Shown: positions 42,238 through 63,712, counted from the first letter of the stretch. The stretch: 64,000 nucleotides of DNA from Ostrea edulis (GCF_947568905.1 NC_079164.1:100564001-100628000), one strand, 5' to 3'. The notes: generated from the sequence alone by a model not told the origin. Program-made: numbers and translations.

Positions 42238-42388
42238 TCAGTCCCCTCCCGCTGCCGTTTTGTTGCGTTCGTGTGTGTGTAGTTTCCGGTAGAGACTTTG
42301 TACATAGGTGAAGACGCACTTCCAGTCTGGCTTCTGCATGCGGACCATGTCCTCCACGTCCAAGAGTGGGGCAATGTCTGCACATTTC
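42238..42388 (-). CDS. SMTN-like: Ig-smoothelin-like gene, last coding exon (end of CH domain: LLDVEDMVRMQKPDWKCVFTYVQSLY...)
   Basis: tgtgtttag acceptor, phase 2; DxEDMV...PDWKCVxTY is the smoothelin-type CH signature; TGA at 42240-42238. Confidence 0.93.
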
Positions 42389-42639
42389 CTAAACACAACA
42401 AATTTTAAAGTAAAACTCGATACTGTCGTATTCTAGACGCACTTTTTTTTTATTTGCTTATCTCTCCTATCTAAAAACTTTCGATTTTCTCTCTTGCCCA
42501 GATTTCTGACAATTTCAAGTTTAATCTTGATTTGTTTAATGAACAGTTTGCCGGTCTGGCAAGTTGCTAAATGTATTATCTTGCCACAAAGTTTTTTTTT
42601 CGGGGGAGGGTGTTATTATTTTGCTATTTCTCTACTTAC

Positions 42640-42791
42640 TCTGCCGTGTCAAAGGCCAGGGTGAAGTTGTATCTCCTCTTTTTGGGATCTAGGGAACTAA
42701 AGTCAAAGGAATCCGGATAGAAGTGGTGAATTAGTGCACAGAAAGCCATTCCGTTGTTCCAGCTGCTGGAGAAATTGGTAATCTCCACATT
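42640..42791 (-). CDS. SMTN-like: Ig-smoothelin-like gene, CH-domain core exon ([31 protein letters not shown]...[10 protein letters not shown])
   Basis: Canonical type-2 CH motif; gtgcag acceptor, GA|gtaagt donor, phase 0/2. Confidence 0.94.
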
Positions 42792-43612
42792 CTGCACGAG
42801 ACATGAAACACGTCATCAAATACAGAAGCCACGAGGAAAGCCAATAGAAATTTCAATTCTTTGAGTTAATTACAAAATATTTTGAAATTTAATCTGAACA
42901 TAAAATATATTAGTACAGAAAAACGAATATGTAATCAAGTGATATTGTATCATGCTAATGATTAGTATAGATAAAGTGATTATGTATATTAGATATAGAG
43001 ATATAAAAAAGGTTAGTATCACGTGGTTAAGTCCCACAACAACCTGCCCACACGTACCCCCTCCAGTTCCCGTATCGTCATACACCGCATTTGTATATCT
43101 ACGTTATGAGTTTATTGACTCCACACCAAACGTTAATGTATCTATTCTCAATGCTAATCCACATATCACCAAATGATTATCACCAAACCAAACTCAACAA
43201 TTTTTAGTAATCAAACCATAAAAAATACAGTGTTTACAGTTAAAACCAAAGCCGTTTAGAATCTTAGCTGAAATCGCAGATGTTGTACATGTTCATCTAC
43301 TACTGGTACAACAGTTCTAAGGCACGCAATACTTCTAAAGCATTCAACTCCATGCCGCTATAAACATTACGCTGTGCCTTCACAGCATAACGCCAGACCT
43401 CTACAGCATAATTACATGCTTCTAAAGCATACACTTTTGCAAATGTAGAAAGCATTCTACACAAATGGCAGCATACGAAACAAATATATGTACTTCTAGC
43501 ACTTGTACATGTACAACTTCTGCTTTATAATTCTAATCAGCGACCACGACAACCTTGGTAGCTCATGCATGACTATTCGTTTCCATGACAATGGCATGCA
43601 GTCATGCGTTAC

Positions 43613-43718
43613 CTCATATTCCCGCGTCATGGCTTTTGTCCAATCCAGTAACATTTGTTTGATTGCGCTGGGACTTCGAACCAGAGCCCTACCACCGCCT
43701 CCCCCGGGCGCTAAATTG
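43613..43718 (-). CDS. SMTN-like: Mutually exclusive exon B (NLAPGGGGGRALVRSPSAIKQMLLDWTKAMTREYE), first CH helix, canonical type
   Basis: ttttactgaag acceptor, GAG|gtaacg donor, phase 2/0; IKQMLLDW matches recalled smoothelin. Confidence 0.88.
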
Positions 43719-44483
43719 CTTCAGTAAAAGATGCACCGATTGGTTAATCTCTTGTTAAGATATACATGTACGTAACTAATGAAAAGGCTTCCTGGAAATT
43801 TGGTTATCAACTGCAACCAAATTTCTAAGAATACAAACGTAATAAAACCTGGAAAAGAAAGCTTTGTTTGTTTGTATGTGACAGGATTTTACTAAGGTAC
43901 ACAACATAGACTAAGAATGGCAAAAATGTTAGCATGTGAAGGCATTGTTATTAGCAACACATAAAACAGTTCAAAAGTTTATTTTCCAAGGCTGATGTTT
44001 AATCAGATATCTAATGCATATATAACAATCCAGATTCTTTTGACTGGCAGTGCGTCAAAAAATAGGTTCATCTGTTTTTGAATTGTTTGAGAAGATGCTT
44101 TCGTTCACAAAGTTTGAATTTCAAGGGATGCTTTTAAAACATGTTTGATAGAGACACTCGTTTGTCAGGAAATGTAAAATACAGTACAATCCAAATCTGC
44201 CGAAATTCCTCATTAGATATCCGTTATAATGAATTATCCGTTATAATGAATATCAGAAAACTGAACTGTGTAACTACATGTGTATATATCAACATGGGCA
44301 TAAAAGGGAAGCACATTAATACACAAGACAAAAATTCAAACAACACACGTAAAAAAAATCAAGTACGAAAATCAGAAATGTTAGAGATTAAAACATGGCT
44401 GTACGCGTACAACAAATATGAGCAGTGAGATATCTACAGGTTAGCGGTGAGCCGGCGCTGACCAGCAAGGCTAGCCGGTATAC

Positions 44484-44598
44484 CTCATAATCTGCCGTAT
44501 TCTTTTGACAGAATCGGAGAATTTCCTGCTTAATTGTGACAGCATTTCGCCGCAATGTGGTGGCTGCTTTTTTGGCGTACGACACAGATAATAAACCA
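44484..44598 (-). CDS. SMTN-like: Mutually exclusive exon A (GLLSVSYAKKAATTLRRNAVTIKQEILRFCQKNTADYE), first CH helix, divergent type
   Basis: catttgtgcag acceptor, GAG|gtatac donor, phase 2/0, homologous to exon B. Confidence 0.75.
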
Positions 44599-44639
44599 CT
44601 GCACAAATGACAGAGAGCATGTTAATACAGGGGTCATAC

Positions 44640-61211: not shown

Positions 61212-61935
61212 AGAAAAGTTCTCCACACACAGAAAGACTCAACCGAGTCTGCATAAAGAAAAGTTCTCTACACAGAGACTCAACCGAGTCTGCATATAGA
61301 AAAGTTCTCTACACAGAGACTCAACCAAGTCTGCATATAGAAAAGTTCTCTACACAGAGACTCAACCGAGTCTGCATATAGAAAAGTTCTCTACACAGAG
61401 ACTCAACCGAGTCTGCATATAGAAAAGTTCTCTACACAGAGACTCAACCAAGTCTGCATATATAAAAGTTCTCTACACAGAGACTCAACCAAGTCTGCAT
61501 ATAGAAAAGTTCTCTACACACAAAAAGACTCAACCGAGTCTGCATAAAGAAAAGTTCTCTACACAGACTCAACCAAGTCTGCATATAGAAAAGTTCTCTA
61601 CACACAAAAAGACTCAACCGAGTCTGCATAAAGAAAAGTTCTCTACACAGACTCAACCAAGTCTGCATATAGAAAAGTTCTCTACACACAAAAAGACTCA
61701 ACCGAGTCTGCATAAAGAAAAGTTCTCTACACAGAGACTCAACCAAGTCCGCATATAGAAAAGTTCTCTACACACAAAAAGACTCAACCGAGTCTGCATA
61801 AAGAAAAGTTCTCTACACAGAGACTCAACCAAGTCTGCATATAGAAAAGTTCTCTACACACAAAAAGACTCAACCGAGTCTGCATAAAGAAAAGTTCTCT
61901 ACACAGAGACTCAACTGACTCTGCATAAAGAAAAG
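61212..61935. repeat. 39-45-bp minisatellite, about 17 copies, with an internal AGACTC-AACC-GAGTCT hairpin
   Basis: Direct periodicity; explains ORF 61444-61746. Confidence 0.94.
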
Positions 61936-62073
61936 CTGTCGAATGACGACTGCTAACATTGGTACCTCTAATGTGATAAAAATTATGTTATTTGGTCCTA
62001 ATTTTTACTATAATTTTAAGGTATAACTAAAAAGGAACAACAGATATTTTTATATCCAGTAAAATTCACTGAC

Positions 62074-62358
62074 CTTTGACCTTAATTTGACAGGATGTTT
62101 TCGTCTCCCCTTTCTCATTCTTGGCAATACATGAATATTCTCCATGGTCATCCAAGAATATCTCCCCTATCTCCAATTTGGCTTTGTCTCCATCGAACGT
62201 CTGTCTGAAGTCTGTGGAGTTCCTCTGTATGATCCCGTCTTTGTACCACGCAATGTGAGTGGCGTCTGCCACCTGGCATTCCAACACCACCGCGTGGCCC
62301 TCTGTCGCCACCATATTCACCAGATTGGACAGGAAACAGGGAGCTCTAATGTTCATAC
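62074..62358 (-). CDS. SMTN-like: Ig I-set domain exon (APCFLSNL...LECQVADATHIAWYKDG...DHGEYSCIAKNEKG)
   Basis: I-set motifs; aatcacag acceptor, G|gtcagt donor, phase 1/1. Confidence 0.92.
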
Positions 62359-62594
62359 CTGTGATTAATTGAATAAAATTAACATTCCAGTATAAATAAC
62401 TTTACAGGCTATGCATATCTAATGATTTTCACTTCTATAGTATATGTAAGAGTTGTGTCCCTTGGTCAGCAAATAGAGTCCACACAAAATGAACTATAAT
62501 ATGGTTCTTTTTAAAGTTCTTTTTTTTTGTGTGTGTGTAGCTATTTTACCACATTACTATACCTGAAAATCATAACTAGGCACTTCTATTTGTA

Positions 62595-62925
62595 TTGCAT
62601 ATGAATTTGTTTTACATAGAACTGTATAAGATCGAAATACTTGCTATGCTAGCATTGTGTATGAATTTGTTTTACATAGAACTCAGTATCAGACAATATA
62701 CTTGCTATGTTAGCATTGCGTATGAATTTGTTTTATATAGAACTTGATACATGACAATATACTTGCTATGCTAAGCATTGGGTATGAATCTGTTTTATAT
62801 AAAACTGTACACAACAATACTTGCTATGTTAACATTGCATTATATGAGAACTGTACAAGACAATATACTATGTTAGTAGCATATGAATTTGTTTTTATAT
62901 AGAACTGTACAAGACTTACTTGCTA
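62595..62925. repeat. About 60-bp degenerate tandem repeat, about 5 copies, whose unit includes the exon/intron junction at 62920
   Basis: tatgaatttgtttt...agaact...tacttgcta recurs at about 60-bp spacing. Confidence 0.8.
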
Positions 62926-63192
62926 CGGTGAGCTTGGCCTTGGTCTGGGCCTCCCCCAGGGTATTACTGAACACACACTTATATTCCCCCATCTGGTCTC
63001 GCCTCACATTGTGGAGGGTCAAAGACGCCTTCCCAGATACGGGATCAAACACCGCCCCTTCGTGAACGACCCTGTCCCCGAGGAACCAGGTGACAAAAGG
63101 GGGTGGAGAACACGTAGCACAGCACTCCAAGGTCACGGATTTCCCTTCTGAAGCGGAGACATCTCGCATCACTGACTTAATCTCTGGACAGC
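62920..63192 (-). CDS. SMTN-like: Ig I-set domain exon (PEIKSVMRD...LECCATCSPPPFVTWFLG...QMGEYKCVFSNTLG)
   Basis: I-set motifs; ttctgcag acceptor, A|gtaagt donor, phase 1/1. Confidence 0.9.
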
Positions 63193-63610
63193 CTGCAGAA
63201 CAGAAGACACAGCATTACGACTTCAAAAGATGTTAACTGATCTTGCAGGTGACATTTAAAGCTCCTGAACATGGATATACTCCTTCCAATAGAAACTTAA
63301 TTTTCAATTTATTATACAAAGTCATGTCTTCAATTTACATTTACTGCAAACTATTAAAGAGGATTGGAACAAAAGAAATGAAATGTTTACTTTGAGTAGG
63401 GCACAACACCATCCTGATACATAAACAAAACTCTATAAGTCTAGGAAGAACCTTGACTTAAAAACACCCACTGCATACAAGAGTATTATTCTCTAATGAA
63501 CTACGACAGTTATGATCATGAAACCCATCACAGTTACACCACAACATCAAGTTTATAATGAGGGTATTATCACAAGCAAGGAAAGACATCACATTTTAAA
63601 CAGTGCCTAC

Positions 63611-63712
63611 ATATCTTCCAGCCGGAGCTGGAGTTCAAGACATCCGTGAGATGCAATTTTTGATTGCGACTATTCGTTTCTAAAATGCTGACAACTGAGA
63701 TGCCCGTGAAAT
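63611..63712 (-). CDS. SMTN-like: Probable upstream linker exon (FTGISVVSILETNSRNQKLHLTDVLNSSSGWKI); gene continues beyond the window
   Basis: ctaac branch site and ccattttgcag acceptor, open 102-nt phase 1/1, weak T|gtaggc donor. Confidence 0.5.

What the first reader, a model, noticed from the sequence alone, without database searches (positions are those of the whole stretch)
42238..63712. Titin/MLCK-type Ig I-set repeats fused to a smoothelin plus CH C-terminus in one reading frame
Seen: phase-compatible exons run continuously from at least four I-set domains (63192-62920, 62358-62074, 58221-57922, 56202-55912) through a 159-nt intron into a 1139-nt disordered exon, then the smoothelin domain, a coiled coil and the CH domain. 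That is about 1150 aa inside the window, 5'-partial. Established: vertebrate smoothelins lack Ig domains, and tandem I-set domains typify sarcomeric scaffolds (titin, twitchin, MLCK, palladin). Inference: a giant actin-linked muscle scaffold that may matter in molluscan muscle and may be split or mis-annotated in automated gene sets.
Basis: partly seen in the sequence, partly recalled or inferred. Interest (0 to 1): 0.7.

Follow-up and report, generated by a model that had tools for sequence, protein, structure and literature searches.

The report
Oyster smoothelin gene with Ig domains
The four immunoglobulin exons and the smoothelin/CH exons do belong to one long muscle-cytoskeleton gene of the flat oyster, but that gene is already a public gene model (misleadingly named "titin homolog") and the same layout is annotated in many molluscs, an annelid, a ribbon worm and a bryozoan.

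Summary
Four single-exon I-set domains lie on the minus strand (63192-62920, 62358-62074, 58221-57922, 56202-55912), all phase 1/1. They are followed by a 159-nt intron, a 1139-nt linker exon, a split Smoothelin domain, a coiled coil and a three-exon CH domain.

The window is Ostrea edulis. Eleven RefSeq isoforms (XP_048760756.2 and others, 1634-2016 aa) map onto exactly these exons, and every one keeps all four Ig exons. They are named "titin homolog" or "unc-89-like".

The gene starts about 24 kb upstream of the window. Two further Smoothelin-domain exons lie 5' of the Ig exons, so the Ig module sits inside a smoothelin gene.

Predicted proteins with I-set + Smoothelin + CH exist in more than 25 spiralian species. 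Sampled deuterostome and arthropod smoothelins have only Smoothelin + CH.

The gene is not split here, only misnamed, and it is already in public databases.

Two details are new: a conserved GC splice donor after Ig4, and five kinase-type motifs in the linker found only in the bivalves sampled. Interest is low to moderate.

The parts
62920..63192 (-). Ig1 exon (I-set), phase 1/1
   Evidence: Pfam I-set E 7e-19. Borders from the RefSeq protein mapping.
62074..62358 (-). Ig2 exon (I-set), phase 1/1
   Evidence: Pfam I-set E 2e-17. Borders.
57922..58221 (-). Ig3 exon (I-set), phase 1/1
   Evidence: Pfam I-set E 5.5e-20. Borders.
55912..56202 (-). Ig4 exon (I-set), phase 1/1, ending in a GC donor (aag|GCAAGA)
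   Evidence: Pfam I-set E 1.8e-21. Sequence read. Borders. A related contig, L010, has the same GC donor and L008 has GT at that position.
55753..55911 (-). 159-nt GC-AG intron between Ig4 and the linker exon, with an in-frame TAA at 55876-55874
   Evidence: The RefSeq protein reads ...MVQKG|ERTEKEP... across the join.
54614..55752 (-). 1139-nt linker exon (379 codons plus a split codon). It has no Pfam domain and carries five conserved hydrophobic-x-R-[S/T/C]-x-S motifs.
   Evidence: No Pfam hit. Orthologous open reading frames in other bivalves, 30-78% identical. Motif conservation.
52505..52600 (-). 32-codon exon encoding the first half of the third Smoothelin domain (...SYDTIEDEEELHKL)
   Evidence: Sequence. 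RefSeq mapping. Smoothelin domain at residues 1655-1689 of P0037.
49183..49258 (-). 76-nt exon encoding the second half of the third Smoothelin domain (...ENFEERKKIRARMKEIREKKQ)
   Evidence: PF12510 hit of 23 bits. Sequence. Borders.
48555..48833 (-). Lys/Glu-rich exon, read as a coiled coil
   Evidence: RefSeq mapping. No Pfam hit. The coiled-coil reading rests on composition only.
47793..47864 (-). 72-nt cassette exon, absent from isoforms X5, X7, X8 and X9
47132..47272 (-). 141-nt cassette exon, absent from isoforms X8 and X9
45726..45795 (-). 70-nt exon preceding the CH domain
   Evidence: isoforms X4 and X9.
44484..44598 (-). CH-domain first exon, version a (used by X1-X3, X5, X6, X8, X10, X11). 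The 5' border is inferred from the phase.
43613..43718 (-). CH-domain first exon, version b (used by X4, X7, X9), mutually exclusive with version a
42640..42791 (-). CH-domain middle exon
   Evidence: Pfam CH E 6e-13. Borders.
42238..42388 (-). CH-domain last exon with the TGA stop at 42240-42238
   Evidence: The translation matches the C-terminus of X1, X4 and X9 exactly.

Best explanation
[quoted passage not shown] It is the only locus in this genome where the exon-by-exon scan found Smoothelin domains.

The gene spans about 46 kb on the minus strand, from an ATG at window-equivalent 88168 to the stop at 42238. It encodes isoforms of 1634-2016 aa. Their layout, from the N-terminus, is:
- two Smoothelin domains;
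- long stretches with no recognised domain;
- four titin-like I-set Ig domains, one exon each, all phase 1/1;
- a 380-aa conserved linker;
- a third Smoothelin domain;
- a Lys/Glu-rich coil;
- alternative cassette exons;
- a C-terminal smoothelin-type CH domain whose first exon comes in two mutually exclusive versions.

Ig4 is joined to the linker exon across a 159-nt GC-AG intron. The gene structure and domain content are shown.

The following is inferred. The protein is a filament-associated scaffold of muscle. The CH and Smoothelin parts act as in vertebrate smoothelins, which associate with actin filaments. The four Ig domains add titin/MLCK/palladin-style binding sites for thick- or thin-filament partners. 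The linker's five basophilic-kinase motifs make it a likely phosphorylation-regulated segment.

The Ig-bearing layout is the normal form of smoothelin in every spiralian model examined (molluscs, an annelid, a nemertean, a bryozoan). It is not an oyster oddity.
For: Domains in the window:
- Pfam finds four I-set domains and a CH domain.
- Smoothelin hits occur only at this locus in the genome, three in total. Two of them lie upstream of the Ig exons.

Match to the public gene model:
- P0037 is XP_048760798.2, 'titin homolog isoform X6 [Ostrea edulis]'. Its longest contig is 112,480,954 bp, the same length as the window's contig.
- It maps at about 100% identity to the window plus the upstream DNA, in order.
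- All 11 isoforms contain the four Ig exons and the linker exon.
- The protein reads MVQKG|ERTEKEP across the GC-AG intron.
- Pfam on P0037 gives 4 I-set, Smoothelin (72.6 bits) and CH.

Comparative evidence:
- The homologous intron is short and phase 1/1 in two related oyster contigs. One has GT (L008) and the other has the same GC donor (L010).
- The same architecture is seen in Mytilus and in Crassostrea, Mizuhopecten, Owenia, Lineus and Haliotis, each with 4 I-set. Pomacea, Octopus and Watersipora models have 2.
- Ig1 to Ig4 pair by position with the Ig domains of Mytilus, Mizuhopecten and Haliotis.

Family assignment:
- The best solved-structure matches of the CH domain are SMTNL1 and smoothelin, at E 2e-43 and 4e-41. 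Alpha-actinin follows at 1e-26.
- The best match of the Ig module is titin I65-I70, E 8e-68.

Expression:
- A scallop unigene was enriched in catch muscle at mRNA and protein level. Its best hits were C. gigas 'unc-89-like' and SMTNL1 (PMC5963113).
Against: I saw no read-level or cDNA evidence. The join therefore rests on gene models, which are computational, and on comparative splice-site conservation.

The donor is non-canonical (GC). An in-frame stop followed by GTAAGG lies 36 nt downstream, so a truncated Ig-only product cannot be excluded as a minor form.

Between phyla the Ig domains do not pair position by position (Owenia, Lineus). A single origin of the module is therefore inferred from its place in the protein, not proven.

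Function, binding partners and phosphorylation are all inference. That the scallop unigene is the orthologue is inferred from the names of its database hits.
Confidence: 0.9

Rival explanations
1. There are two separate genes: an Ig-only gene ending at the TAA just after Ig4, and a smoothelin gene starting at or after the linker exon. Gene predictors fused them.
For: The Ig4 donor is GC rather than GT, and an in-frame TAA lies 36 nt downstream. An ATG-initiated 411-aa open reading frame starts inside the 159-nt intron and runs into the linker exon. One scallop model (Ylistrum balloti, 812 aa) contains only the Ig part.
Against: - Two Smoothelin-domain exons lie 5' of the Ig exons on the same strand. 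An Ig-only gene would have to be nested inside the smoothelin gene.
- The intron is phase-compatible, short and conserved. It has a canonical GT in one relative and the same GC, in the typical AAG|GCAAG context, in another.
- Independent annotation projects in more than 25 species from four phyla give the fused layout.
- All 11 RefSeq isoforms make the join.
Confidence: 0.04
2. There is one gene, but Ig-less short isoforms are also made from an internal promoter downstream of the Ig exons. This would parallel the short smoothelin-A of vertebrates, so the Ig module would be tissue-specific rather than constitutive.
For: Vertebrate SMTN uses an intragenic promoter for its short isoform (established knowledge, not tested here). 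RefSeq already shows alternative first exons for X10 and X11. Of the sampled words of 54600-56210, two runs held 0.70, the share of the linker exon alone. Two others held 0.89-0.90, the share of linker plus Ig4. This is suggestive only.
Against: None of the 11 RefSeq isoforms in the cluster lacks the Ig exons. The word shares were never laid on the sequence and may be coverage noise.
Confidence: 0.25
3. The Ig exons are a recent, lineage-restricted exon-shuffling insertion in oysters, taken from a titin- or twitchin-like gene.
For: RefSeq names the product 'titin homolog', and the best solved-structure match of the Ig module is titin. Phase 1/1 exons are the class that shuffles easily.
Against: Four Ig domains at the same place in the protein occur in mussels, scallops, abalone, an annelid and a nemertean. 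They show position-by-position orthology across bivalves and a gastropod. The insertion is therefore at least as old as conchiferan molluscs and probably older.
Confidence: 0.02

Closest known systems
Vertebrate smoothelin, long isoform (SMTN-B), and SMTNL1
   Same: Both have Smoothelin domains (PF12510) near the N-terminus and again before the C-terminus, and a single C-terminal CH domain. The oyster CH domain matches the solved SMTNL1 and SMTN CH domains far better than any other CH domain. The oyster protein aligns in order with a bird smoothelin: residues 306-435 with 14-164, and 1656-1990 with 614-919.
   Different: The oyster protein has four I-set Ig domains and a 380-aa conserved linker inserted between the N-terminal and C-terminal Smoothelin domains, and it is about twice as long. 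The sampled vertebrate, amphioxus, echinoderm, hemichordate and arthropod smoothelins have no Ig domain.
Predicted Ig-containing smoothelins of other spiralians, for example Mytilus galloprovincialis A0A8B6CRA9 'Smoothelin', Mizuhopecten yessoensis 'Smoothelin' and Crassostrea virginica LOC111132924
   Same: They have the same domain order (Smoothelin, I-set x4, linker, Smoothelin, CH). The C. virginica protein aligns over the full length at 65% identity. The Ig domains are orthologous position by position.
   Different: Nothing essential differs; the oyster gene is an orthologue. The names differ widely between species: titin homolog, unc-89-like, MLCK, serine-rich adhesin, smoothelin.
Titin, twitchin, obscurin (unc-89) and MLCK, the sarcomeric Ig proteins
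   Same: All have tandem I-set domains. The best solved match of the oyster Ig module is titin I65-I70.
   Different: Pfam reported no Fn3, kinase, SH3 or DH-PH domain. There are only four Ig domains, and the rest of the protein is smoothelin. The RefSeq names reflect Ig similarity only.

Membership tests
Smoothelin family | One or more Smoothelin domains (PF12510) | tested here: met
   Three exon hits at this locus, of 24.6, 23.0 and 19.6 bits. The whole protein P0037 scores 72.6 bits against a cut-off of 23.
Smoothelin family | A single C-terminal CH domain of the smoothelin type | tested here: met
   CH domain at residues 1901-1985 of P0037. The best PDB matches are SMTNL1 (2jv9, E 2e-43) and SMTN (2d87, E 4e-41). 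Alpha-actinin follows at 1e-26.
Smoothelin family | Similarity in the same order to characterised (vertebrate) smoothelin outside the CH domain | tested here: met
   BLASTP against a bird smoothelin aligns the N-terminal Smoothelin region and the C-terminal Smoothelin-to-CH region in order.
Smoothelin family | Association with actin filaments in contractile smooth muscle | not testable with these tools
   Indirect evidence only. A scallop unigene whose hits were C. gigas 'unc-89-like' and SMTNL1 is enriched in catch muscle (PMC5963113).
Titin / twitchin / obscurin (unc-89) giant sarcomeric proteins, as the RefSeq name implies | Long arrays of Ig together with Fn3 domains | tested here: not met
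   Only four I-set domains, and Pfam reported no Fn3 domain in P0037.
Titin / twitchin / obscurin (unc-89) giant sarcomeric proteins, as the RefSeq name implies | A protein kinase domain (and SH3 / DH-PH for unc-89) | tested here: not met
   Pfam reported no kinase, SH3, DH or PH domain.
Myosin light-chain kinase, the name given to the Aplysia and Ylistrum models | A Ser/Thr kinase domain with a calmodulin-binding segment | tested here: not met
   Pfam reported no kinase domain in P0037. The Aplysia model's precomputed domain list holds I-set, CH and Smoothelin only.

The most novel reading that the evidence does not exclude
The Ig-bearing smoothelin may be a spiralian-wide innovation that links thin filaments (through CH and Smoothelin) to thick-filament or dense-body partners (through the four Ig domains). 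In bivalves, its linker has five motifs of the form hydrophobic-x-R-[S/T/C]-x-S. They are conserved in oysters, mussels and scallops and were not found in any other lineage examined. This linker could be a second kinase-controlled switch of the catch state, acting alongside twitchin. No paper found in four full-text searches describes this architecture or these sites.
Probability: 0.1. Interest if true: 0.65.

Novelty: already known. Interest (0 to 1): 0.3.

Why it matters
As a gene model this is ordinary. The locus and its orthologues are already in RefSeq and UniProt with the same exons and domains.

Three modest points remain.
- The public names ("titin homolog", "unc-89-like", "MLCK", "serine-rich adhesin") hide that this is the animal's smoothelin. 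That can mislead muscle proteomics and comparative studies.
- In every spiralian model examined, smoothelin carries a titin-type Ig module that the sampled deuterostome and arthropod smoothelins lack. This lineage-wide change of architecture appears undescribed in the papers I could search.
- The bivalve-only motif array in the linker gives a concrete, testable candidate for regulation in catch muscle, where the likely scallop orthologue is enriched.

Tried and rejected
**RNA reads**
- The look-up of sequencing runs listed runs holding 0.70 to 1.00 of the sampled words.
Nothing was laid.
- After that I sent no query containing those places to any search tool. Later local scripts used the window file only as a BLAST subject in the closed sandbox.

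**Transcript-derived proteins**
- Three word searches and the exhaustive search gave only genomic open reading frames that read into the introns, or gene models.
- None came from an intron-free contig across the Ig4/linker join.
- The Logan members of the RefSeq cluster are single-exon genomic open reading frames.
- The look-up of encoding contigs found no record for P0005.

**Pfam on single exons**
- It missed the Smoothelin domain and two of the three CH exons, because the pieces are short.
- The six-frame family scan and the full-length RefSeq proteins resolved both.

**Joined model**
- I did not build or search a joined spliced model. Exons were searched one by one by reference.
- The RefSeq proteins that the tools returned served as the full-length sequence.
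- Borders were checked junction by junction, without assembling the product.

**Exon-border scripts**
- The first script failed at most junctions because its anchors were poorly placed. It was replaced.
- Two junction groups were then read by eye.

**Literature**
- Four full-text searches found no paper describing Ig-containing smoothelins.
- They found one scallop muscle proteomics paper that mentions the protein.

**Ideas rejected**
- Two separate genes.
- A recent insertion specific to oysters.
- Membership of the titin, unc-89 or MLCK families.
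Full report
**Observation**

On the minus strand of the window, four stop-free stretches each score as I-set immunoglobulin domains, with E-values from 2e-17 to 2e-21. A stretch at 42812-42639 scores as a CH domain.

A six-frame scan of the whole assembly with the Smoothelin model (PF12510) gave three hits, and all three are at this locus:
- one at window 49187-49252, on the minus strand;
- two beyond the upstream end of the window on the same strand, at window-equivalent 80174-80242 and 84673-84744.

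The Ig exons therefore lie between Smoothelin-domain exons.

Reading the junctions directly gave these details:
- Ig4 begins after an AG at 56204-56203, in phase 1.
- Ig4 ends at 55912 in phase 1, at a GC donor (aag|GCAAGA).
- The next exon begins at 55752 after tccatAG, in phase 1.
- That exon ends at 54614 in phase 0, before GTGAGT.
- If Ig4 were read through, a TAA would follow at 55876-55874.

**Identity of the locus**

The 379-codon linker exon has orthologous genomic open reading frames in other bivalves, 30-78% identical.

The exhaustive protein search also returned a 1618-aa Mytilus galloprovincialis protein, VDI08897.1, which UniProt names 'Smoothelin'. Pfam gives it four I-set domains, then the linker homologue, then Smoothelin, then CH.

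Searching with its C-terminal part returned 'titin homolog isoform X6 [Ostrea edulis]', XP_048760798.2. This protein maps at about 100% identity, exon after exon, onto the window plus 40 kb fetched upstream.

The cluster holds eleven RefSeq isoforms, X1-X11, of 1634-2016 aa. [quoted passage not shown]
- All eleven contain the four Ig exons and the linker exon.
- They differ in the first exons (X10, X11), in three small exons between 47.9 and 45.7 kb, and in which of two mutually exclusive first CH exons they use.
- X6 also ends earlier, at ...QKPDWK, so it has a different C-terminus.

I refined the borders junction by junction without assembling the product. Across the 159-nt intron the protein reads ...AIMVQKG|ERTEKEP....

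I neither built nor searched a joined model of my own. Exons were searched singly by reference, and the full-length sequences used were those the tools returned.

**Is the Ig-to-smoothelin join real?**

I could not obtain read-level evidence.
- None of the protein searches returned a transcript-derived open reading frame across the join.

The case rests on five points:
- Smoothelin-domain exons lie on both sides of the Ig exons.
- The eleven RefSeq isoforms are unanimous.
- Two related oyster contigs have the homologous intron short and phase 1/1. One has a canonical GT donor (L008). The closer relative (L010) has the same GC donor, in the typical AAG|GCAAG context.
- The same architecture appears in independently produced gene sets. 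Four I-set domains occur in Mytilus species, Crassostrea virginica, Mizuhopecten, Haliotis, the annelid Owenia and the nemertean Lineus. Two occur in the Pomacea, Octopus and bryozoan Watersipora models examined.
- In one search the precomputed domain lists show I-set + Smoothelin + CH for many further molluscs.

By contrast, hemichordate, echinoderm, amphioxus, vertebrate, horseshoe-crab, insect and crustacean smoothelins list only Smoothelin + CH.

Ig1 to Ig4 pair best with the domain at the same position in Mytilus, Mizuhopecten and Haliotis. The module therefore predates the split between bivalves and gastropods. Against Owenia and Lineus the pairing is no longer positional, so common origin across phyla is inferred from the module's place in the protein.

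**What it is and how it probably works**

The CH domain is of the smoothelin type. The solved SMTNL1 and SMTN structures match at E 2e-43 and 4e-41, and the next family, alpha-actinin, matches at 1e-26.

The Ig module is most like titin's tandem I-band Ig domains. Pfam reported no Fn3, kinase, SH3 or DH-PH domain, so the RefSeq names describe only the Ig similarity.

The protein aligns in order with a bird smoothelin at both ends.

I read it as the oyster's smoothelin, a filament-associated scaffold of muscle. Its CH and Smoothelin parts would act as in vertebrates. The Ig module would add binding surfaces of the kind used by titin, MLCK and palladin. This function is inferred.

There is published indirect support. 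In scallop, a unigene was enriched in catch (smooth) versus striated adductor muscle at both mRNA and protein level. Its best hits were C. gigas 'unc-89-like' and human SMTNL1 (PMC5963113).

**A detail worth recording**

The linker exon is not featureless. It carries five copies of the motif hydrophobic-x-R-[S/T/C]-x-S-hydrophobic-[R/K]: VRRSESVR, LRRTESAR, LRRSESAR, LNRSQSMR and LRRTSSLK.
- Ostrea, Crassostrea and Mizuhopecten keep all five, in the same order. Mytilus keeps four.
- The strict motif is absent, or present only once elsewhere in the protein, in the gastropod, cephalopod, annelid, nemertean, bryozoan, deuterostome and arthropod proteins examined.
- The motif fits the consensus of basophilic kinases. 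That these serines are phosphorylated is inference.

**Comparison and novelty**

The gene meets the membership tests for the smoothelin family and fails those for titin, unc-89 and MLCK.

The architecture is a variant of characterised smoothelins, but it is already in public databases for this very locus and for dozens of species. I therefore rate it 'already known'.

Four full-text searches found no paper that describes Ig-containing smoothelins. Those searches cover only open-access papers and bioRxiv preprints.

Misnaming is general.

**Verdict**

Novelty is low. Residual interest lies in the spiralian-wide Ig module, the bivalve-specific motif array and the conserved GC donor.

Noticed in passing
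window 55911-55910 (minus strand); L010 and L008: The donor after Ig4 is GC (aag|GCAAGA). A closer relative's contig (L010) has the same GC donor. A more distant oyster contig (L008) has GT at the same position.
   Followed up: yes
window 54614-55752 (minus strand); P0037 residues 1292-1617: The linker exon has five motifs of the form hydrophobic-x-R-[S/T/C]-x-S-hydrophobic-[R/K]. They are conserved in order in Ostrea, Crassostrea and Mizuhopecten, and four of the five in Mytilus. They are essentially absent from the gastropod, cephalopod, annelid, nemertean, bryozoan, deuterostome and arthropod smoothelins examined.
   Followed up: partly
window 44484-44598 and 43613-43718 (minus strand): There are two mutually exclusive versions of the first CH-domain exon. 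RefSeq isoforms X1-X3, X5, X6, X8, X10 and X11 use the upstream version. X4, X7 and X9 use the downstream one. This matches another first-stage note on this window.
   Followed up: partly
window 49183-49258, and upstream at window-equivalent 80167-80242 and 84669-84744: The second half of each of the three Smoothelin domains is encoded by a 76-nt exon that starts in phase 0 and ends in phase 1. This suggests the domains arose by exon duplication.
   Followed up: no
window 55807-54575 (minus strand): An ATG inside the 159-nt intron opens a 411-aa reading frame in frame with the linker exon. Two sequencing runs held 0.70 of the sampled words of 54600-56210, the share of the linker exon alone. 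Two others held 0.89-0.90, the share of linker plus Ig4. This could hint at an Ig-less short isoform, or it could be coverage noise.
   Followed up: no
window 59258-60738, 61212-61935 and 58478-58720: There are minisatellites in the introns flanking Ig3: a 40-nt unit in 37 copies, an 86-nt unit in 8.4 copies and an 80-nt unit in 3 copies. They produce the long repetitive pseudo-ORFs listed.
   Followed up: partly
upstream of the window, window-equivalent 64111-64861 (P0037 residues 621-871): The 751-nt exon just before Ig1 has no Pfam domain. Even so, together with the Ig module it aligns in order with the mussel, scallop, Pomacea, annelid and nemertean proteins. It may hold an unrecognised conserved region.
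   Followed up: no
P0145 (Ylistrum balloti, 812 aa): A scallop model named 'myosin light chain kinase, smooth muscle-like' lists only Ig-type domains and aligns to the query spanning Ig3, Ig4 and the linker at 39% identity. It is probably a truncated or split model of the same gene.
   Followed up: no
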